A stretch of 64,000 bases of DNA from the sequence record MK568540.2, one strand, 5' to 3'. Below are positions 5,247 to 49,323 of the stretch, piece after piece (the stretch's first letter is position 1; every line of letters begins with the position of its first letter). Made by a program: the position numbers and the translations under genes. The notes beneath the pieces were generated by a model. It searched no databases, had not been told where the DNA came from, and saw only the letters and a list, made by a program, of their open reading frames with translations.

Positions 5247-5666
5247 TTATAGACGATTTACTAGTCTAGTTGACAAGGCAAACAATCTATCGAAGTTAGT
5301 TTTTAAGTGATACTGTATAGACACGTCATACGTGTTTTCATCATATACAGGGATGACATCAATTCGCTGAATAGCAACACGAGGTTCCCATCTTGAAATT
5401 GCGTTTTCAATACTATATTTGATTGAGAACGCGCTTGCTGGAGAAATATTCTCAAACAATTGATTGTTAATGTCACAGCCGAATTCAGGGTTGAACGGTC
5501 GTTCTCCCTTATTCGTACTCACGATACCTACGATAGATTCTTGTATTGCTTTTAAGTCATACGATGCGCTCAAGTCATTGTTTACAACACTTTTATTAAA
5601 GTTTGCAGGGATGTCACTGAAATAGAAACTCCCTGGCTTTAACGTGTTCAACTCTGCAATTGCCAT
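5247..5666 (-). CDS. 25: Baseplate wedge protein gp25
   Basis: 139 aa; KGERPFNPEFGC motif and WEPRV. Confidence 0.92.
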   Translation of the reverse strand: MAIAELNTLKPGSFYFSDIPANFNKSVVNNDLSASYDLKAIQESIVGIVSTNKGERPFNPEFGCDINNQLFENISPASAFSIKYSIENAISRWEPRVAIQRIDVIPVYDENTYDVSIQYHLKTNFDRLFALSTRLVNRL

Positions 5667-19721: not shown

Positions 19722-19739
19722 TATCGAGAGTACATTGGT

Positions 19740-19862
19740 CGAGTGTTGGTGTAGTGGCAGCACACGTAGCATACTGTAATCAGACATGATTATATTCAGC
19801 AACCAATTTACGCATATCATAGGGAGATCGTGGGAACGGTTCGATTCCGTTACACTCGACCA
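19740..19862 (+). ncRNA. tRNA-like RNA E1 with CAGCAA module inserted in the anticodon stem (loop ATAGGGA)
   Basis: Acceptor CGAGTGT/ACACTCG, D-arm, T-arm AACGG-TTCGATT-CCGTT, ACCA end; 49-nt insert after position 28; 21-bp leader/trailer duplex 19726-19872. Confidence 0.8.
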
Positions 19863-20121
19863 ATGTACTCTCACTAACAAAGCGAGGTGGACAATTTGAT
19901 TGTATATCTTCTCGCACTAGTATTCATCGTCCTTTTTGCCTTGGACATTGAAGAAGAAAAGGTGCGCATTCATACTTTTGCGCTAATCACATGCGAACGG
20001 GTCATTCATCCCGTAATTAAAGCGCACGATTCCAGATTGTGTTTTGATTAGCTAAGGCAAATATAACTAGAGGATTTTTGGTGCTTGTGGTTAATCACAA
20101 GCACTCTCAAGAACATATTGA

Positions 20122-20243
20122 GCAGGGTTGGTGTAGTGGCTAGCACACGTAGCATAAACGCAAGCTGTTAAGTTTGTATTCTGCAATCAATTTAGCATAT
20201 CATTTCCAAGATCGTGACGCAGGTTCGAATCCTGCACCCTGCT
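20122..20243 (+). ncRNA. tRNA-like RNA E2 with CTGCAA module (loop ATTTCCAA)
   Basis: Cloverleaf with insert after position 28; 17-bp extended acceptor duplex 20112-20252; no encoded CCA. Confidence 0.8.
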
Positions 20244-20260
20244 CAATATGTTTTTACATT

Positions 20261-20373
20261 GGTGAAGTTAGTTCAGTAGGTTAGAACGCCGGCCAAAAAA
20301 CGAAGTCTGATAAGATTTCATTCTGCATTCACATGCACGCCGGAGGTCGCAGGTTCGAGTCCTGCACTTCACC
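20261..20373 (+). ncRNA. tRNA-like RNA E3 with CTGCAT module in the anticodon loop
   Basis: GGTGAAGT/ACTTCACC acceptor, CCGGC/GCCGG anticodon stem, canonical T-arm. Confidence 0.8.
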
Positions 20374-20383
20374 TTCAAATTCT

Positions 20384-20508
20384 GGAGAGTTAGCTCAGTC
20401 TGGTAGAGCAAAAGAATGTTAAAGAATACTGACAAGCATTCATGCTGCAAACCTTAATAACTAGGTAAATCTTTTTGTCACGTGGTTCAAATCCCGTACT
20501 CTCCACCA
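20384..20508 (+). ncRNA. tRNA-like RNA E4 with CTGCAA module in the anticodon loop
   Basis: GGAGAGT/ACTCTCC-A-CCA, GCTC/GAGC D-stem, AAAGA/TCTTT anticodon stem. Confidence 0.8.
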
Positions 20509-22064: not shown

Positions 22065-22180
22065 AGTCGGGTAGCTCAGTGGTAGAGCACGAAGAATGAT
22101 ACTGACAAGTATCGCTCCAGCACTCCTTCAATTGCCTGTTAAGCACGTGGTCGCTGGTTCGAATCCAGCCCCGACTACCA
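22065..22180 (+). ncRNA. tRNA-Asn(GTT)-like RNA E5 with a 41-nt CAGCAC module inserted between positions 28 and 29
   Basis: Removing the insert restores CGTGC-CTGTTAA-GCACG; acceptor AGTCGGG/CCCGACT-A-CCA. Confidence 0.85.
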
Positions 22181-23261: not shown

Positions 23262-23392
23262 TCAAAAAGATGTTTACAACGATATAAACATCGTGTACAA
23301 TGAAGAAAAGCGAAACATCATTCAAAATCGAATGAAAAGTTTTTCAAAAAAGATGTTTACAACGATAAAAACATCATGTACAATGAAGAAAA
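23262..23392 (+). promoter_or_regulatory. Duplicated strong early promoters
   Basis: Two near-identical ~48-bp copies: AAAAAGATG-TTTACA-N17-TACAAT-GAAGAAAAG (-35 boxes at 23273 and 23356). Confidence 0.85.
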
Positions 23393-24051: not shown

Positions 24052-24139
24052 AGCTTGCATACTGCAATTTAACTTAATCTATTGATCGCTCGGCGAACTC
24101 AGTTCAGACAGCGATAAACAGACCAAAGAACGCAAGCTG
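24052..24139 (+). ncRNA. Free-standing CTGCAA-motif RNA
   Basis: GCTTGC-ATA-CTGCAA ... GCAAGC-TG with inner ATCGCT/AGCGAT stem. Confidence 0.75.
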
Positions 24140-24842: not shown

Positions 24843-24901
24843 AGTAATCTTACAGCAAACAATACAAAACTTTTATTTGGAAAAAGCAAAAAGGATTACT
24901 G
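24843..24901 (+). ncRNA. Minimal CAGCAA-motif RNA carrying an anticodon-like stem-loop
   Basis: GTAATC-TTA-CAGCAA ... CTTTT-ATTTGGA-AAAAG ... GATTAC-TG. Confidence 0.8.
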
Positions 24902-25227: not shown

Positions 25228-25301
25228 TGGGGATTGGTGTAAAGGCAGCATAACGTACTTTGAATGCGTTGGTATCAGTTCGAATCTGTTATCCCCAGCC
25301 A
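25228..25301 (+). tRNA. tRNA-Gln (TTG)
   Basis: TGGGGAT start, loop CTTTGAA, CCA. Confidence 0.9.
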
Positions 25302-25310
25302 AATACCGAA

Positions 25311-25424
25311 GAGTGTTTTCAGCAAACAATTTACTAATATTCTTATCGGAAAGAAATGTTTAGGGTTCGATTCCCTTTCAGTGTTGGTATCACTGGTCTG
25401 GACGACGCTAGTAATAACACTCAG
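25311..25424 (+). ncRNA. Circularly permuted tRNA-like RNA closed by the CAGCAA motif (YrlA-like topology)
   Basis: Order: GAGTGT-TTT-CAGCAA, anticodon-like hairpin, T-arm AGGG-TTCGATT-CCCT, closed acceptor CAGTG/CACTG, D-like hairpin, ACACTC-AG. Confidence 0.8.
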
Positions 25425-25428
25425 TAAC

Positions 25429-25504
25429 GCCCTGATAGCACAACTGGCAGTGCAGCTCACTTGTAATGAGCAGGTTCGCGGTTCGAATCCGTGTCAGGGC
25501 ACCA
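25429..25504 (+). tRNA. tRNA-Thr (TGT)
   Basis: Loop CTTGTAA, CCA. Confidence 0.92.
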
Positions 25505-25745: not shown

Positions 25746-25820
25746 GGGCCGTTAGCTTAATTGGGAAAGCGCCTCACTTGCAATGAGGAAGATAGGGTTC
25801 GACTCCCTGCGTGTCCACCA
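25746..25820 (+). tRNA. tRNA-Ala (TGC)
   Basis: Loop CTTGCAA; irregular acceptor/T stems; CCA. Confidence 0.8.
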
Positions 25821-25894
25821 AATTTCGAACACATGAGCGTAGACTCTCTTTACTACCATCGTCTACACTAGTTCATGGTTCGAATCTTTTCAAT

Positions 25895-26033: not shown

Positions 26034-26262
26034 AGACAATATACAGCAAACAATTGAAATTACTTAAAAGAAGTGATGATCTTAACCTGGGCTGATTTTA
26101 ACCTGAGCTTGCTTAGGCGCAGCTTGAAAGGAAAGATTCTCTCTGTCTAGAAATAGTCAGATAGGCGCGTCGCTGAAACAGACGATATTTGCTTGTTGAG
26201 AATCAATAAGCTAGTCAACTCCGATTTATGCAAAAGACGAAAAAACACTTCGGTATTGTCTG
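26034..26262 (+). ncRNA. Large CAGCAA-motif RNA L1
   Basis: GACAAT-ATA-CAGCAA ... ATTGTC-TG; several hairpins; 3' block shared with L2. Confidence 0.8.
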
Positions 26263-27999: not shown

Positions 28000-28260
28000 G
28001 CAATAAGACATTGTACAGCAATCATTACAAAATCAAAGCAAACTTTAATAGTAATGAGGCGCACTAGCTGCTTTCTCAGTGATGACGTGAGCCTGTCGCA
28101 TTCTCATGGTAGGAAATGACCATTAAGACGGTGTTCGTACTGTCAAACGAAATAGGACTCATGCCGAATCATGAGTATTTTTCCGATGAGAAACATCGTT
28201 ATAGTCAATTGAGATTTAAGGAAAGACGATAAAACATTTCTCGAATGTCTGTGTATTGCA
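28000..28260 (+). ncRNA. Large CAGCAA-motif RNA L2
   Basis: GACATT-GTA-CAGCAA ... AATGTC-TG, outer GCAATA/TATTGC stem, many hairpins, 3' block shared with L1. Confidence 0.8.
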
Positions 28261-28266
28261 CATTAG

Positions 28267-28290
28267 AACCTGCCTTGAGCAGGTTTTTTT
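28267..28290 (+). terminator. Terminator ending the RNA island
   Basis: AACCTGC-CTTGA-GCAGGTT followed by a T-run. Confidence 0.85.
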
Positions 28291-30951: not shown

Positions 30952-30980
30952 GTTTACATGCATTAAAATTCGCGTATAAT
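30952..30980 (+). promoter_or_regulatory. T4-type early promoter of the DUF2828 gene
   Basis: AAAAAAGT-GTTTAC-N17-TATAAT. Confidence 0.8.
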
Positions 30981-30992
30981 CACTTCATCAAA

Positions 30993-31035
30993 GACATTTT
31001 ACAGCAATTAATTATGAGGAAATGAACAATGTCAG
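30993..31035 (+). promoter_or_regulatory. CAGCAA motif enclosing the SD and pairing with the start codon of the DUF2828 gene
   Basis: GACATT-TTA-CAGCAA-...GAGG...-AATGTC-AG; the ATG at 31029 lies in the 3' strand. Confidence 0.85.
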
Positions 31036-32465
31036 TATTTATGAACGCAATGCAAACAAACGATTCACGCACAGCAAACGGTGCAGTTACTCACAGCACT
31101 TCAGGTAACGAGTGTCTAAACTTGTTCTTCGGTATTGCTGCTATGCGTGGCAACGATCAGTCTAAAACACTGTTCGGTCGTGCGTTTGCAGAAAACCCAG
31201 AACTAGCGACTCGCATTCTTTTGTGGTCTCGTGATGTTCGAGGTGGTGCGGGTGAACGTGGTACTTTCCGTACTCTATTCACTAAACTTTGTAATGAACA
31301 GCCTGACGTAGCTCGTGCTGTAATGTCGAAAATTCCAGAACTAGGTCGTTACGATGACTTGATTTCTGCTTTCGGTACACGTCTTGAAAAAGATGCGATT
31401 ACAATGTGGTCGAACGCAATTGTCAATGACAAGAATGGTCTTGCTGCGAAGTGGTTCCCACGTGAAAACAGCAAAAACGGTCATGTGTTCAAGCGCACAA
31501 TCAAGTCTCTTGGCGTAACTGCGAAGCAGTGGCGTAAGATTCTGTCGCTTCTGTCTGACACTGTTGAGCAGAAGATGTGTGCGCAAAAATGGGATGCAAT
31601 CGACTTCGGTAAGTTGCCTTCTGTAGCGTCTGCTCGTTATCAACAAGCATTCGGTCGTAACGCTTCAACACGTTACACAAACTACATCGAGTCACTTCAA
31701 AAAGGTGAAGCGAAGATCAACGCTGGCGCATTGTTCCCATACGATGTCGTTAAGAGCGTTAGTCACGGTAATGCGTCTGTAGCGAACGAGCAATGGAAAG
31801 CTCTGCCAAACTACATGGAAGGTTCTGATGAACGCATCATCCCTGTTGTTGACGTGTCTGGCTCTATGAGCACGCCAATTAACGCAGGTACAGACCGTTC
31901 AGGTGTGACTTGTAAGCAAGTTGCAATGTCTCTTGGGATTTATGTTGCTGAACGCAATGAAGGCATCTTCAAAGATCAGTTCATTTCGTTCTCAAGCGAC
32001 CCGCACTTCCACCAGTTGCGCGGCTCTTCATTGAAAGAGCGTCTTGATAACATGAATCGTTCAGGCGAAGACATGAGTACGAACATCGGTAAGTGCTTTG
32101 ATGTTCTGCTAGAGCGTGCGAAGCGTGCAAATCTTTCACAAGAAGATATGCCAACCAAGTTGCTTATCATGAGTGACATGGAATTCGATCAAGCAAACAC
32201 TGGTGGTGGTTGGTACGGTCGCGGTGAACCTGCGAACTTCGATGCAATCAAAGCCAAGTACGCACGTGCTGGTTATGAAATGCCACAACTGGTCTTCTGG
32301 AACATTCGTGGTCGTCTTGGCAACGTTCCGGTTAAAGCTGGTGAAGCGGGTACTGCACTGGTATCTGGTTGTAGCCCATCTATCTTGACTTCACTGTTGG
32401 GTGGTGAGCTTGAGCCAATCAAGATCATGATGAAAACTGTAGGCGTCGAACGCTACAGCTTTTAA
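31029..32465 (+). CDS. DUF2828-type TROVE/Ro60-like protein with C-terminal vWA domain
   Basis: T.NGA..HSTSG..CL.LF, RDVRGGAGER, IPELGRYDDL, AKWFPR; vWA MIDAS DVSGSM, ST, LIMSDMEFD, VFWN. Confidence 0.8.
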   Translation: MSVFMNAMQTNDSRTANGAVTHSTSGNECLNLFFGIAAMRGNDQSKTLFGRAFAENPELATRILLWSRDVRGGAGERGTFRTLFTKLCNEQPDVARAVMSKIPELGRYDDLISAFGTRLEKDAITMWSNAIVNDKNGLAAKWFPRENSKNGHVFKRTIKSLGVTAKQWRKILSLLSDTVEQKMCAQKWDAIDFGKLPSVASARYQQAFGRNASTRYTNYIESLQKGEAKINAGALFPYDVVKSVSHGNASVANEQWKALPNYMEGSDERIIPVVDVSGSMSTPINAGTDRSGVTCKQVAMSLGIYVAERNEGIFKDQFISFSSDPHFHQLRGSSLKERLDNMNRSGEDMSTNIGKCFDVLLERAKRANLSQEDMPTKLLIMSDMEFDQANTGGGWYGRGEPANFDAIKAKYARAGYEMPQLVFWNIRGRLGNVPVKAGEAGTALVSGCSPSILTSLLGGELEPIKIMMKTVGVERYSF

Positions 32466-32514: not shown

Positions 32515-33039
32515 ATGTTCGATTGGGAAGCGATAGAAACAGCTATCAATAACAGTCATCCAAATAGCACAATATACGTTGGGTGTGATAGTAAGCGTAA
32601 AAGTGACATGATTAGTTACGCGACTGTGATCATAATTCATCTTGAAGGTAGTAAAGGTGCTCAAGTGTTTAAAGCAGTTGAGACTGAACCTGCATACTTA
32701 TCATGTAAAGATGGTATCAGAAGTCGATTGATGAATGAAGTATACAAAGCGGGTGAAACTGCACTAATGGTTAAGCCAATGTGCGGTACTAGAGGCTTTG
32801 AAGTTCACGTTGACATCAACCCTGACCCCACACACAAATCTCACGTTGCTTATAACGAAGCTAAAGGCACGATCTTGGGATATGTTGGTCAAGAGCCCGT
32901 GTTCAAACCTGATGCGTTTGCTGCGTCTTGTGCTGCTGATTATGACGCAGTTCGAAGAGCAGATAAAATCGCTAAACGAAAAGAACTTAGACGGGCTAAA
33001 CGAAAAGCAAAGAAACAAAAAACAAAAGGGCGCAAATAG
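32515..33039 (+). CDS. RNase H-like YkuK (DUF458)-family protein
   Basis: IYVGCDS, RLMNEV, EVHVDINPD..HKS, KPDAFAAS.AAD. Confidence 0.8.
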   Translation: MFDWEAIETAINNSHPNSTIYVGCDSKRKSDMISYATVIIIHLEGSKGAQVFKAVETEPAYLSCKDGIRSRLMNEVYKAGETALMVKPMCGTRGFEVHVDINPDPTHKSHVAYNEAKGTILGYVGQEPVFKPDAFAASCAADYDAVRRADKIAKRKELRRAKRKAKKQKTKGRK

Positions 33040-48213: not shown

Positions 48214-49323
48214 TTAGTAGTCGTCATCGTCGTCTTCGAATTCATCTGCGAGGTCATCCCACAGTTCTTCAAAGTGAGCAATGAATTTCTCTGGCTTGTA
48301 CTGGTCCCAGTAATCGAACGAACGATGGTTTACCGTTTCAGTGCGCATTTCTGCCATATCAAATTCGCCGTCCATTTCCCAATACATTTCTGGCATTGAT
48401 TCTTCAATTACGTCACCGTCAGCGTAGATGAAATTGAAATGACTTGCAGGAATTCGACCTTTGTACCCGAATACACCTATGCGAGTACTCAACCCACCCA
48501 GACGTTTGCCGAATCGACTTTCAATATCATCTTTGTGATACTTCGTCCCGTCTCCGCGTTGATGTGGTAATTGATAGAATATGTCAGCATAACCGAGTTC
48601 GCTTGCTTCTTCTGAATTTGCACCTAGTACATCAATTACAACGTCATAATCAGACACAAGCTTGCTTTCGTCTGGTATACGAATCTCGATTATCACAGGG
48701 AACGAGTTGTTTCGGTTCGCTGAGTGTGTCGCATGAAACATTGCTTTATCAAGTTCAGTCGTAATGAATACTTTATCAGCATGTTCAATATTATCAAATT
48801 GAGTTTCGCCTGGGTTCGGCTTCAGACCAAACTTCAACATTGATTCGATGTATGCTGTCGATGTGCCATGATAAAACGTCTTTTGTGACAGTTTCTTGTT
48901 GAATTCATATCGATCTGTTTCGAAATCGTGCTCAACTTCATCGTAATCAGGGTTAAATGATTGCGTGCGACGAGTTACACCGTTTAGATTAAGTGCTTTG
49001 ATCGTCTTACGAAGCGTGTCAGACGTTACAGACGGTCGGTAAGCAGAATCCCCGAACATATCTAGTCTGCCGTTCTCAATCGTCGCGTATACCGCTTGTG
49101 CGCCTTCTCTATACCAATCGTCTAGATCGTATTCTTCCTCGAAGTCAGTTCCCAACTCGCGATTGATGAATGGCACTAGACGTTCAAACTCTCTATCGTT
49201 ATTCCATACCCAAATATTCTTACCGTTAGCAAGTACTTTTGAGCCGTTTCGTGGTCGCCCGCCGCGAATAAAAACCTCAGTGACTAACTGAAGTTCTTCC
49301 ATAAAAGATTTTAGATTTTTCAT
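48214..49323 (-). CDS. ADP-ribosyltransferase-fold protein with CTS-like N-terminus
   Basis: FYHGTS..I...GL.P and VFITT..A..A motif; start MKNLKSFMEELQLVTE; CATAAATA late promoter at 49344-49351. Confidence 0.65.
   Translation of the reverse strand: MKNLKSFMEELQLVTEVFIRGGRPRNGSKVLANGKNIWVWNNDREFERLVPFINRELGTDFEEEYDLDDWYREGAQAVYATIENGRLDMFGDSAYRPSVTSDTLRKTIKALNLNGVTRRTQSFNPDYDEVEHDFETDRYEFNKKLSQKTFYHGTSTAYIESMLKFGLKPNPGETQFDNIEHADKVFITTELDKAMFHATHSANRNNSFPVIIEIRIPDESKLVSDYDVVIDVLGANSEEASELGYADIFYQLPHQRGDGTKYHKDDIESRFGKRLGGLSTRIGVFGYKGRIPASHFNFIYADGDVIEESMPEMYWEMDGEFDMAEMRTETVNHRSFDYWDQYKPEKFIAHFEELWDDLADEFEDDDDDY

What the first reader, a model, noticed from the sequence alone, without database searches (positions are those of the whole stretch)
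25311..25424. Circularly permuted tRNA mimic: the E1/E5 architecture opened at the module loop
Seen, 5' to 3': GAGTGT-TTT-CAGCAA; TTACTA stem; anticodon-like hairpin TTCTT-ATCGGA-AAGAA; T-arm AGGG-TTCGATT-CCCT; hairpin CAGTG-TTGGTAT-CACTG (a closed acceptor); D-like hairpin; TAGTAA; ACACTC-AG. This order is what results if E1/E5 is cut in the 6-nt module loop and its acceptor ends are joined. Established: YrlA Y RNAs have a T-arm, closed acceptor and D-arm on a Ro-binding stem. Inference: a YrlA-like RNA with a new Ro-binding motif that keeps an anticodon hairpin.
Basis: partly seen in the sequence, partly recalled or inferred. Interest (0 to 1): 0.86.

Follow-up and report, generated by a model that had tools for sequence, protein, structure and literature searches.

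The report
Phage Y-RNA-like permuted tRNA mimic
A conserved 112-base RNA in the tRNA gene cluster of a KVP40-type Vibrio phage folds like a tRNA whose ends have been moved, and carries a short tag found next to Ro60-like protein genes in many phages, so it is probably that protein's partner RNA.

Summary
It is conserved in 30 KVP40-type records and in the more distant phages D480 and 1.081.O. Ten of 29 base pairs show compensatory changes.

It is not a decayed tRNA. It is a circularly permuted tRNA mimic: terminal stem P1, inner stem P3, then a variable-arm hairpin, T arm, closed acceptor and a weak D arm.

The new point is the module: P1, 1-3 bases, then CAGCAA. It lies on the same strand beside the DUF2828 gene in 54-58 of 78 unrelated phage contigs. 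My model of the window's DUF2828 protein matches Ro60 over its full length. A mycobacteriophage relative of the RNA, next to a "Ro-like" gene, gives a sub-threshold Rfam YrlA hit. The Va3 element gives none.

So this is a new variant of the phage Y-RNA/YrlA kind. Binding to the protein and any recruited enzyme are inferred, not shown.

The module also matches the Rfam consensus of the Dictyostelium Class I RNA motif (CUUACAGCAA). That link is untested.

The parts
25302..25310 (+). 5' leader AAUACCGAA, directly after the encoded CCA of tRNA-Gln. AAUACC is invariant. AUACC is complementary to the acceptor-loop GGUAU (unexplained).
25311..25316 (+). P1 5' strand GAGUGU, one half of the terminal stem. 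It pairs with 25417-25422.
   Evidence: Invariant within the KVP40/D480/1.081.O group. The equivalent stem covaries in distant family members: GAAUGU/ACAUUC, GGAUGC/GCAUCC, GGAUUC/GAAUCC.
25317..25330 (+). 5' side of the internal loop: UUU plus CAGCAAACAA (25320-25329). This is the conserved single-stranded module motif.
   Evidence: Invariant in 9 of 9 sequences. The same 10-mer occurs at 24853 and 26044. TACAGCAA occurs 112 times on the + strand and 16 on the - strand of the DUF2828 loci.
25331..25336 (+). P3 5' strand UUACUA, the anticodon-stem equivalent. It pairs with 25409-25414.
   Evidence: 4-5 bp are kept in all sequences, and D480 has two compensatory pairs. UUACU/AGUAA also occurs in distant L061 elements.
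25340..25355 (+).
   Evidence: The stem is kept, with one U-A to G-C compensatory change in 1.081.O. The loop is 6-8 nt and variable.
25362..25376 (+). T arm AGGG-UUCGAUU-CCCU with a canonical T loop.
   Evidence: 3 of 4 pairs show compensatory changes. The outermost pair has five pair types.
25379..25395 (+). Closed acceptor-like hairpin CAGUG-UUGGUAU-CACUG.
   Evidence: 3 of 5 pairs show compensatory changes.
25396..25406 (+). Weak D-like hairpin GUC-UGGAC-GAC, with GG invariant in the loop.
   Evidence: Distant members carry a canonical UAGCUCAGUUGGUAGAGC at this position.
25409..25414 (+). P3 3' strand UAGUAA.
25417..25422 (+). P1 3' strand ACACUC.
25423..25428 (+). 3' tail AGUAAC, ending at the RNase P site of tRNA-Thr (which starts at 25429). 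AGU is invariant.
   Evidence: The same C-AGU tail occurs in the mycobacteriophage Snenia RNAs.
31029..32465 (+). Gene for the 478-aa DUF2828/DUF7788 protein, a Ro60-like ring plus vWA domain. It is the inferred protein partner.
   Evidence: Pfam matches at 1.7e-46 and 2.3e-29. AF2 model with pLDDT 84 and pTM 0.86. The top 10 Foldseek PDB hits are all Ro60/TROVE, E 7e-9 to 3.5e-6, TM 0.46-0.64.
24843..24900 (+). Sibling RNA, short form (58 nt): stem plus UUA-CAGCAAACAA, with no tRNA-like domain.
   Evidence: Rfam Dicty_Class_I_RNA 31.8 bits, below the gathering score of 41.5. Script results. Fold.
24052..24138 (+). Sibling RNA (87 nt): AGCUUGC-AUA-CUGCAAUU...GCAAGCU-GU.
26034..26261 (+). Sibling RNA, long form (228 nt): AGACAAU-AUA-CAGCAAACAA...AUUGUCU-GU.
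   Evidence: Its ends are shared with 227-228-nt elements in L028 and L029.
28006..28250 (+). Sibling RNA, long form (245 nt): AGACAUU-GUA-CAGCAAUC...AAUGUCU-GU, followed by a terminator at 28265-28287.
30992..31011 (+). Half-module AGACAUU-UUA-CAGCAAUUAA in the leader of the DUF2828 mRNA, after a TTTACA-17-TATAAT promoter-like site read from the sequence at about 30955-30983.
   Evidence: Similar motifs occur in the leaders of 1.081.O and D480, but in only 5 of 53 distinct upstream regions overall.
19739..19853 (+). Non-permuted relative (E type): a tRNA-like body with a hairpin plus CAGCAACCAAUUUAC in place of the anticodon loop.
20121..20245 (+). E type, with CUGCAAUCAAUUUAG.
20262..20373 (+). 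E type. The syntenic KVP40 element is annotated tRNA-Pseudo-5.
   Evidence: Rfam tRNA 56.3 bits with an insert. Cloverleaf fold, z = -3.26. KVP40 annotation.
20384..20505 (+). E type. Loop UGACAA, then AUG-CUGCAAAC.
22065..22177 (+). E type. Loop UGACAA, then GCU-CCAGCAC.

Best explanation
The element is a functional small RNA of the phage Y-RNA/YrlA kind.

1. Production (inferred). It is co-transcribed with the tRNA array. It would be released by the same enzymes that mature its neighbours: 3' trimming of tRNA-Gln 9 nt upstream and RNase P cleavage of tRNA-Thr 6 nt downstream.

2. Structure (shown by covariation). Its two ends pair as stem P1. An asymmetric internal loop carrying UUU-CAGCAAACAA separates P1 from a second stem, P3, which stands in for the anticodon stem. 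On P3 sits a tRNA-like body with a closed acceptor: variable-arm hairpin, canonical T arm, a 5-bp acceptor hairpin capped by a 7-nt loop, and a reduced D arm that keeps the GG needed for the elbow.

3. Protein partner (inferred from co-occurrence). The P1/CAGCAA/P3 module is the docking site for the phage's Ro60-like DUF2828 protein.

4. Effector (inferred by analogy). The tRNA-like body is the effector end. It presents a tRNA elbow to a tRNA-recognising enzyme, most likely the host 3'-5' exonuclease PNPase as in the Ro60-Y RNA-PNPase (RYPER) complexes. The ring would thus be tethered to, or would modulate, an RNA-processing activity during infection.

The window holds a whole set of RNAs with the same tag: short, long, permuted tRNA-like and non-permuted tRNA-like. 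This suggests one protein with several interchangeable RNA adaptors.
For: Structure and selection:
- Conserved at 81-100% identity in 30 records.
- About as well conserved as the flanking tRNA genes.
- Compensatory changes in P3, V, T, acceptor and D helices: 10 of 29 pairs, with 0 of 500 shuffles reaching the observed values.
- Indels of 1-3 nt rule out a coding region.

Family:
- Distant phages carry the same layout with textbook D arms. L075 9286-9398 reads P1, UA-CAGCAAC, V, AGAGG-UUCGAGU-CCUCU, a 7-bp acceptor closed by GAAA, UA, then GCUC-AGUUGGUA-GAGC. L039, L054 and L061 hold further examples.
- The Felix O1-like phage VpaE1 has one inside its tRNA array, just after its DUF2828 gene.

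Link to the protein:
- A stem of at least 7 bp, plus 1-3 nt, plus CAGCAA lies within -2.5/+1 kb of the DUF2828 gene on the same strand in 54 of 78 IMG/VR loci. The opposite strand gives 7 and shuffled sequence gives 3.
- No protein-coding neighbour is conserved across these loci.
- The protein model matches Ro60 over its full length, including the Thermus phage phiLo Ro60.
- Mycobacteriophage homologues (32-34% identity) are annotated "Ro-like RNA binding protein".
- In phage Snenia, three RNAs with the same module follow that gene. The middle, tRNA-like one hits Rfam YrlA at 39.3 bits, E 1.4e-5.

Precedent:
- YrlA RNAs sit next to Ro60 genes in bacteria and 22 phages (PMC4201824).
- phiLo Ro60 binds two phage Y-like RNAs and the host PNPase in vitro (PMC12135203).

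Transcription context: promoter-like sites at 23273 and 23356 and a terminator at 28265 bracket the array. None flanks the element itself.
Against: - No experiment shows the RNA, its ends, or any binding.
- The predicted fold is no more stable than shuffles (z = -0.48).
- The Rfam YrlA model does not detect the element, and the published Ro-binding motif GNCGAA(N)G is absent. An ACCGAAG just upstream is not conserved.
- The element is 5.6 kb from the protein gene, outside the 4-kb criterion of Chen 2014.
- P1 and the CAGCAA motif never vary within the orthologue set, so they have no covariation of their own there.
- The D arm has only 3 bp, and the acceptor hairpin 5 bp.
- The 11-sequence alignment was fitted to the model.
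- The co-occurrence statistic uses my own simple descriptor, not a calibrated model.
- PNPase as the recruited partner is pure analogy.
Confidence: 0.6

Rival explanations
1. It is a decayed or rearranged tRNA gene remnant with no function of its own, left in a fast-evolving tRNA array.
For: It lies in a 28-gene tRNA array that also holds several degenerate tRNA-like stretches. Its T loop is tRNA-like. ARAGORN and Rfam tRNA reject it. Its fold energy is ordinary.
Against: It is kept at the same Gln/Thr position from Va3 to nt-1, D480 and 1.081.O. There are compensatory changes in five helices. Its 19-nt 5' module is invariant. The same architecture recurs in unrelated phages next to the DUF2828 gene.
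Confidence: 0.03
2. It is a cis-acting structured spacer. A tRNA-like punctuation mark would guide RNase P, RNase E or RNase Z processing of the polycistronic tRNA precursor and would have no role after cleavage.
For: It sits 9 nt after one tRNA and 6 nt before the next. No promoter or terminator of its own was found. tRNA-like structures are known processing signals (general knowledge).
Against: Most neighbouring tRNAs in the array are separated by only a few bases and need no such spacer. This reading does not explain the invariant CAGCAA module. It does not explain the module's presence on short non-tRNA-like RNAs, nor its linkage to the DUF2828 gene in phages where no tRNA flanks it.
Confidence: 0.1
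3. It is a tRNA decoy or sponge that works without the Ro-like protein. It would soak up a host factor that recognises the tRNA elbow, such as a defence nuclease, a modification enzyme or a tRNA-binding toxin.
For: The T arm, the elbow GG and a closed acceptor that cannot be charged are conserved. The phage invests heavily in tRNA supply. It has five further tRNA-bodied RNAs without anticodon loops.
Against: There is no anticodon loop, so it cannot decoy anticodon nucleases. The most conserved part is not the tRNA-like body but the P1/CAGCAA module, which also occurs on RNAs with no tRNA-like part.
Confidence: 0.15
4. The P1/CAGCAA module is recognised by another protein, for example an RRM-type protein, as reported for Dictyostelium Class I RNAs. 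Its linkage to the DUF2828 gene would then reflect co-regulation or a shared operon rather than direct binding.
For: In Dictyostelium the only Class I RNA binder shown to be direct is the RRM protein Rnp1A/CIBP. The motif differs from the CGAA motif of known Ro60 ligands.
Against: No other protein gene is conserved beside the RNAs in phages. The partner gene has a Ro60 fold, and Ro60 has known Y-RNA partners. The mycobacteriophage member of the family matches YrlA.
Confidence: 0.1

Closest known systems
YrlA (Rfam RF02553), the bacterial and phage Y RNA-like tRNA mimics of Chen et al. 2014 (PMC4201824)
   Same: Same order of parts on a terminal stem: variable region, T arm, closed acceptor-like hairpin, D arm. 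Encoded on the same strand as a Ro60-type gene. A mycobacteriophage member of the present family gives a full-length YrlA match at 39.3 bits.
   Different: The Rfam model gives no hit on this element, even at E<=10. It has no GNCGAA(N)G motif. The conserved motif is (U)UA/UUU-CAGCAA in a 5'-side internal loop. The D arm is reduced to 3 bp. The element lies 5.6 kb from the protein gene and inside a tRNA array. The partner protein is of the DUF2828/DUF7788 type, not a Pfam TROVE hit.
Yrl1/Yrl2 RNAs and Ro60 of Thermus phage phiLo (PMC12135203; PDB 9KOP, 9L5Y)
   Same: A phage-encoded Ro60-like ring with phage-encoded partner RNAs. The phiLo protein is the best structural match to the window's protein model. 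The complex with host PNPase gives a tested precedent for the proposed mechanism.
   Different: The phiLo RNAs are described as stem-bulge-stem RNAs with a CGAA motif, directly upstream of the gene. The paper contains no mention of "tRNA-like" or "YrlA".
Dictyostelium Class I RNAs (Rfam RF01414; Kjellin et al. 2021, PMC7919456)
   Same: A 6-bp stem joins the 5' and 3' ends. An 11-nt motif sits directly after the 5' strand, with Rfam consensus C-CUUACAGCAAU. The element has GU-UUUCAGCAA, which keeps all five positions reported as near-invariant: T3, C6, C9, A10, A11. In Va3 it starts AAG and ends C-AGU, against AAG and C-UGU. The short sibling at 24844-24901 scores 31.8 bits.
   Different: The element is 112 nt, not 42-65 nt, because a tRNA-like body is inserted. 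Neither it nor the sibling RNAs reach the gathering score of 41.5. Class I RNAs were reported as unique to Dictyostelia and bind an RRM protein. Whether dictyostelids have a DUF2828 protein was not testable here.
The E-type elements of this window, whose syntenic KVP40 counterparts are annotated tRNA-Pseudo-3, -4 and -5
   Same: The same phage clade, the same tRNA-derived body and the same stem-N3-C(A/U)GCA module.
   Different: In those elements the acceptor ends are open, some with an encoded CCA, and the module stem is closed by a 4-6-nt loop inside the anticodon arm. In this element the module stem is open and the acceptor is closed, which is a circular permutation.
Permuted tRNA genes (Cyanidioschyzon type) and permuted tmRNA
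   Same: The 3' half (T arm, acceptor 3' strand) precedes the 5' half (acceptor 5' strand, D arm). Some distant family members even keep a discriminator plus CCA before the spacer (L061 9422-9554).
   Different: This element has no anticodon loop, only a 5-bp acceptor and no CCA, so it cannot mature into a decoding tRNA. There is no tag reading frame.

Membership tests
YrlA (RF02553 / Chen 2014) | Covariance-model score at or above the Rfam gathering score (69 bits) | tested here: not met
   No YrlA match on 25300-25430 at E<=10, nor in the 8.5-kb search.
YrlA (RF02553 / Chen 2014) | T arm with a tRNA-type T loop | tested here: met
   AGGG-UUCGAUU-CCCU. Three of 4 pairs covary.
YrlA (RF02553 / Chen 2014) | [quoted passage not shown] | tested here: met
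   CAGUG-UUGGUAU-CACUG. Three of 5 pairs covary.
YrlA (RF02553 / Chen 2014) | D arm with conserved D-loop nucleotides (consensus AGCUCA..GGUAGAGC) | tested here: inconclusive
   Only GUC-UGGAC-GAC: a 3-bp stem with one compensatory change and GG invariant. Distant family members do have the canonical arm.
YrlA (RF02553 / Chen 2014) | GNCGAA(N0-1)G motif near the 5' end, the presumed Rsr-binding site | tested here: not met
   ACCGAAG at 25305-25311 is replaced by ACCAUAG or ACCAUUG in relatives. The conserved motif is CAGCAA.
YrlA (RF02553 / Chen 2014) | Encoded within 4 kb of, and on the same strand as, a Ro60 orthologue | tested here: inconclusive
   Same strand, but 5,605 nt upstream of the gene at 31029. 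The partner has a Ro60 fold but matches Pfam DUF2828/DUF7788, not TROVE.
YrlA (RF02553 / Chen 2014) | Bound by Ro60/Rsr; carries tRNA modifications (psi55, D) | not testable with these tools
   Needs immunoprecipitation and modification mapping.
Dictyostelium Class I RNA (RF01414) | Covariance-model score at or above the gathering score (41.5 bits) | tested here: not met
   No hit on the element. The sibling at 24844-24901 scores 31.8 bits and L016 3839-3899 scores 28.2 bits.
Dictyostelium Class I RNA (RF01414) | Short stem joining the 5' and 3' ends, with the conserved 11-nt motif directly after the 5' strand | tested here: met
   GAGUGU/ACACUC with UUU-CAGCAA. It matches the reported near-invariant positions.
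Dictyostelium Class I RNA (RF01414) | Length 42-65 nt with a variable, unstructured interior | tested here: not met
   112 nt with a conserved tRNA-like interior.
Dictyostelium Class I RNA (RF01414) | Dictyostelid origin, with the upstream DUSE promoter element | tested here: not met
   The element lies in a phage genome, inside a bacterial-type tRNA operon.
Canonical tRNA | Open 7-bp acceptor stem and a 7-nt anticodon loop; recognised by tRNA finders | tested here: not met
   ARAGORN finds none. Rfam tRNA scores 12.7 bits against a gathering score of 29. The acceptor is closed. The only candidate loop is 6-8 nt and variable.
Ro60/TROVE proteins (for the partner gene) | HEAT-repeat ring plus a C-terminal vWA domain | tested here: met
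   AF2 model with pTM 0.86. Full-length Foldseek matches to 2NVO, 1YVR, 2I91, 9KOP and human Ro60. By sequence against the PDB there is no Ro60 hit.

The most novel reading that the evidence does not exclude
The terminal stem plus (C)UUACAGCAA module would be the signature of an old and widespread ribonucleoprotein: a DUF2828-type Ro60 paralogue with its own class of Y-like RNAs.

Under this reading, phages use the module as a portable tag. It can be fused to nothing (60-nt RNAs), to long domains, or to a tRNA body in either circular permutation.

The abundant Dictyostelium Class I RNAs, whose function is unknown and which were thought unique to social amoebae, would be the eukaryotic members of the same RNA class and would partner a DUF2828 protein there.
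Probability: 0.35. Interest if true: 0.9.

Novelty: new variant of a known kind. Interest (0 to 1): 0.74.

Why it matters
- Three things become one testable system: a much-studied model phage group (KVP40; also Felix O1-like and mycobacteriophages), a very large uncharacterised protein family, and a set of unannotated small RNAs. The DUF2828 family has at least 7,470 relatives in the protein search and occurs in 711 phage records.
- The result gives a concrete, mutable RNA motif for the Ro-like protein.
- It explains the odd "pseudo-tRNAs" annotated in KVP40.
- It shows that a tRNA body can be attached to the same tag in two permutations. This says something about which part of the RNA carries the tag and which part does the work.
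- If the resemblance to Dictyostelium Class I RNAs is homology, a 20-year-old question about their function becomes directly approachable through the Ro60 paradigm.

Tried and rejected
- Rfam at gathering score and at E<=10 gave no family for the element.
- MFE folding gave a z-score of -0.48, which is not informative.
- An exact-pattern scan of IMG/VR for the T-loop-to-acceptor stretch found only VH7D and KVP40 themselves.
- A MAFFT alignment of ten distant tRNA-like members aligned only the module and the T arm. I therefore did not build an independent covariance model from it, and used a simple descriptor script instead.
- A sequence search of the DUF2828 protein against the PDB gave only spurious armadillo-repeat designs. 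The Ro60 relation appeared only by fold.
- I looked for a conserved protein neighbour, such as a nuclease partner. The RNaseH-like PF04308 gene is adjacent only in the KVP40 clade. Ten distant loci have unrelated neighbours.
- I tested whether the module in the DUF2828 mRNA leader is general. It occurs in 5 of 53 distinct upstream regions, so it is clade-specific.
- Coding potential was rejected. There are only short overlapping ORFs, and the indels are not multiples of three.
- The supplement of Chen 2014, the 2020 Annual Review and Avesson 2011 are not held. I could not check which phages were already listed, nor what DDB_G0281243 is.
- Literature searches found no paper linking DUF2828 or Class I RNAs to Ro60 or Y RNAs.
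Full report
**Where the element is.** The window is Vibrio phage Va3 (MK568540.2, bases 124001-188000), a KVP40-type T4-like phage. The finding lies in a + strand array of 28 ARAGORN-called tRNA genes. It fills the gap between tRNA-Gln (25228-25301, with encoded CCA) and tRNA-Thr (25429-25504). In KVP40 and 29 other records the homologous 128-nt gap is unannotated or covered by a spurious "hypothetical protein".

**Check of the observation.**
- No tool calls it: ARAGORN, Rfam at gathering score and Rfam at E<=10 on the 131-nt stretch, which gives only a 12.7-bit partial tRNA match and no YrlA.
- The minimum-energy fold contains the outer stem, T arm, acceptor hairpin and D hairpin. It is no more stable than shuffled sequence (z = -0.48). 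The AU-rich helices prove nothing on their own.

**Comparative evidence.**
- The element is kept at 81-100% identity in 30 phage records.
- A 9-sequence MAFFT alignment shows a mean column identity of 93%. The 19-nt stretch GAGUGUUUUCAGCAAACAA is invariant. Indels of 1-3 nt are incompatible with coding. Compensatory changes occur in the T stem (A-U, G-U, G-C and C-G at one pair; G-C and A-U at the next) and in the acceptor hairpin (C-G/U-A and U-A/A-U).
- A covariance model built from that alignment recovers orthologues at the same Gln/Thr position in Vibrio phages D480 (77.7 bits) and 1.081.O (54.8 bits). Their DUF2828 proteins are only 75-80% identical to Va3's.
- With these two added, 10 of 29 pairs have changes on both sides and 97.7% of cells pair. 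No shuffle of 500 reaches any measure, and partners slid by 1-3 columns give 0-2 such pairs. Every helix except P1 has at least one compensatory pair. This alignment is model-fitted, so the counts lean towards the structure. The MAFFT alignment points the same way.
- The element is about as conserved as the true tRNA genes beside it.

A decayed remnant is therefore excluded for practical purposes.

**Anatomy.**
- P1 (25311-16 with 25417-22) closes the molecule.
- A 14-nt 5'-side internal loop, UUU-CAGCAAACAA-U, faces UA on the 3' side.
- P3 (25331-36 with 25409-14) carries a multi-helix junction. It holds a hairpin UUCUU/AAGAA, the spacer AUGUU, a T arm with a canonical UUCGAUU loop, a 5-bp hairpin with the loop UUGGUAU, and a 3-bp hairpin whose loop keeps GG.
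- Read as a tRNA, P3 is the anticodon stem opened at its loop. The first hairpin therefore occupies the variable-arm position, not the anticodon position. Its loop is 6, 7 or 8 nt long and differs in sequence between relatives.
- This is the order of the Rfam YrlA consensus and of Chen et al.'s description, in which V, T, AS and D arms sit on a stem.

**The family.** Scanning 78 IMG/VR contigs chosen only because they encode a relative of the window's DUF2828 protein (40-54% identity) gave weak model hits. These share a covarying P1, 2-3 nt, CAGCAA and a T arm.
- Reading one locus (L061) shows an array of six such RNAs directly upstream of the DUF2828 gene. Four have permuted tRNA bodies. One has a 7-bp closed acceptor that still carries a discriminator and CCA before the spacer.
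- Folding and a descriptor script show textbook versions elsewhere. L075 9286-9398 has a 7-bp acceptor closed by GAAA, then UA, then GCUC-AGUUGGUA-GAGC.
- The Felix O1-like coliphage VpaE1 has short and tRNA-like forms within the tRNA array that follows its DUF2828 gene.
- Mycobacteriophage Snenia has three module-bearing RNAs right after its "Ro-like RNA binding protein" gene. The middle, tRNA-like one is a full-length but sub-threshold Rfam YrlA match (39.3 bits, E 1.4e-5; gathering score 69).

The Va3 element is thus a diverged member of a phage RNA family that overlaps what Chen et al. 2014 called phage YrlA RNAs. Later work lists those phages as mycobacteriophages, CcrColossus and Bacillus phage G.

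**Link to the protein.**
- The 478-aa product of 31029-32465 matches Pfam DUF7788 and DUF2828.
- Its AlphaFold model (pLDDT 84, pTM 0.86) matches only Ro60/TROVE structures in its ten best PDB hits. These are the D. radiodurans Rsr, Xenopus and human Ro60, and the Thermus phage phiLo Ro60, over about 520-570 aligned columns.
- A stem of at least 7 bp followed by 1-3 nt and CAGCAA lies within 2.5 kb upstream or 1 kb downstream of the gene on the same strand in 54 of 78 loci. The opposite strand gives 7 and shuffled sequence gives 3. Several of the remaining loci have one 7-9 kb away.
- CTTACAGCAA occurs 23 times on the gene strand and never on the other strand.
- No protein-coding neighbour is conserved.

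Partnership is the simplest reading, but it is an inference from co-occurrence.

**Inside the window.** The same module marks:
- a 58-nt RNA (24843-24900);
- an 87-nt RNA (24052-24138);
- two long RNAs (26034-26261 and 28006-28250, the latter followed by the array's terminator);
- the leader of the DUF2828 mRNA itself (30992-31011).

Five further RNAs (19739-19853, 20121-20245, 20262-20373, 20384-20505, 22065-22177) are ordinary-topology tRNA bodies. In them the anticodon loop is replaced by a closed version of the module stem plus C(A/U)GCA. The syntenic KVP40 copies of three of them are annotated tRNA-Pseudo-3, -4 and -5.

**Mechanism.**
- Shown: a conserved, structurally constrained, permuted tRNA-like RNA; a shared module; linkage of that module to a gene whose product has a Ro60 fold.
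- Inferred: release from the polycistronic precursor by tRNA-processing enzymes (no promoter or terminator flanks it); docking of the Ro-like ring on P1/CAGCAA/P3; use of the tRNA-like elbow to engage a tRNA-recognising enzyme.

The best precedents are the Ro60-Y RNA-PNPase complexes. One is the phage phiLo case, where the phage protein and RNAs bind the host PNPase and dampen it.

**Unexpected resemblance.** The short sibling at 24844-24901 is the best Rfam match in its region to Dictyostelium Class I RNA (31.8 bits; E 6e-5 on 81 nt and 0.006 on 8.5 kb; gathering score 41.5). The Rfam consensus reads GaUcuC-CUUACAGCAAU...GagAuC-UG.
- Class I RNAs are about 60 nt, with a 6-bp terminal stem, an 11-nt motif after the 5' strand, an AAG start and a CUGU end. 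Their function is unknown and they were reported as unique to Dictyostelia.
- The phage RNAs share all of these features.
- One of four proteins pulled down with a Class I RNA, DDB_G0281243, is uncharacterised.
- I found no paper connecting these RNAs with Ro60 or DUF2828. I could not test whether dictyostelids encode the protein.

This is a lead, not a result.

**Verdict.** It is a new variant of the YrlA/Y-RNA kind rather than a member of Rfam YrlA. Its value lies less in the single locus than in the module it exposes.

Noticed in passing
window 24843-24900; L016 3839-3899; 78 IMG/VR loci: RNAs of about 57-60 nt (terminal stem, UUA, CAGCAA..., C-UGU) sit directly beside DUF2828 genes in most loci. 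They match the Rfam consensus of Dictyostelium Class I RNA at sub-threshold scores (31.8 and 28.2 bits against 41.5). That family was published as unique to social amoebae.
   Followed up: partly
window 19739-19853, 20121-20245, 20262-20373, 20384-20505, 22065-22177: Five tRNA-bodied RNAs have the anticodon loop replaced by a hairpin plus a C(A/U)GCA module of about 45 nt. Some end in an encoded CCA. Three syntenic KVP40 elements are annotated as pseudo-tRNAs.
   Followed up: partly
window 26034-26261 and 28006-28250; L028 11492-11718; L029 2601-2828: Long (about 228-245 nt) module-bearing RNAs with no tRNA-like part. Va3 and unrelated marine phage contigs share similar lengths, both ends, and an ACGAA stretch before the 3' stem strand.
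   Followed up: partly
window 30955-31028: The DUF2828 gene is preceded by a TTTACA-17-TATAAT promoter-like site. Its leader carries AGACAUU-UUA-CAGCAAU. A similar leader motif occurs in 1.081.O and D480 but in only 5 of 53 distinct upstream regions overall. This may be clade-specific autoregulation.
   Followed up: partly
window 25303-25307 and 25386-25390: The invariant leader AUACC is perfectly complementary to the invariant GGUAU in the closed-acceptor loop. In D480 and 1.081.O a C-to-U change keeps a G-U pair. There is no covariation to test it.
   Followed up: no
L093 4484-4750 (Mycobacterium phage Snenia): Three consecutive RNAs follow the Ro-like gene: short, tRNA-like (sub-threshold YrlA hit) and short. 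All have a stem, 2-3 nt, CAGCAA and a C-AGU tail, the same tail as the Va3 element.
   Followed up: partly
L094 4740-5540 (Escherichia phage vB_EcoM-VpaE1, Felix O1-like): Several module-bearing RNAs (GACC..-UUA-CAGCAAA...GGUCUGG) are interleaved with tRNA genes just downstream of the DUF2828 gene. One at 5399-5536 has a T arm and a closed acceptor.
   Followed up: partly
L095 1507-2058 (Listeria phage A511): A ROOL RNA match (87.5 bits; gathering score 99.1) lies about 1 kb upstream of the phage's DUF2828 gene.
   Followed up: no
L039 8605-9054; L091 1044-1378: Phage contigs carry tmRNA genes, one of the permuted alpha type, within a few kb of their DUF2828 genes.
   Followed up: no
window 32515-33039: An RNaseH_like (PF04308) gene directly follows the DUF2828 gene in Va3. 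D480 has a same-sized, unannotated CDS at that position, and 1.081.O has one annotated "ribonuclease H-like domain protein". Ten distant loci lack it; one of them (L066) has a poly(A) polymerase/CCA-adding head domain gene instead.
   Followed up: partly
window 25746-25817 and 25821-25894: The first stretch is a 44.9-bit Rfam tRNA match that ARAGORN does not call (the syntenic KVP40 feature is tRNA-Pseudo-1). It is followed by a stretch with a T-arm-like GGTTCGAATC and no recognisable tRNA around it.
   Followed up: no
window 48214-49302 (- strand): A 362-aa protein with a weak PARP catalytic-domain match (E 1e-4, below the Pfam cut-off). The 1.081.O homologue is annotated as a poly(ADP-ribose) polymerase catalytic domain protein.
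   Followed up: no
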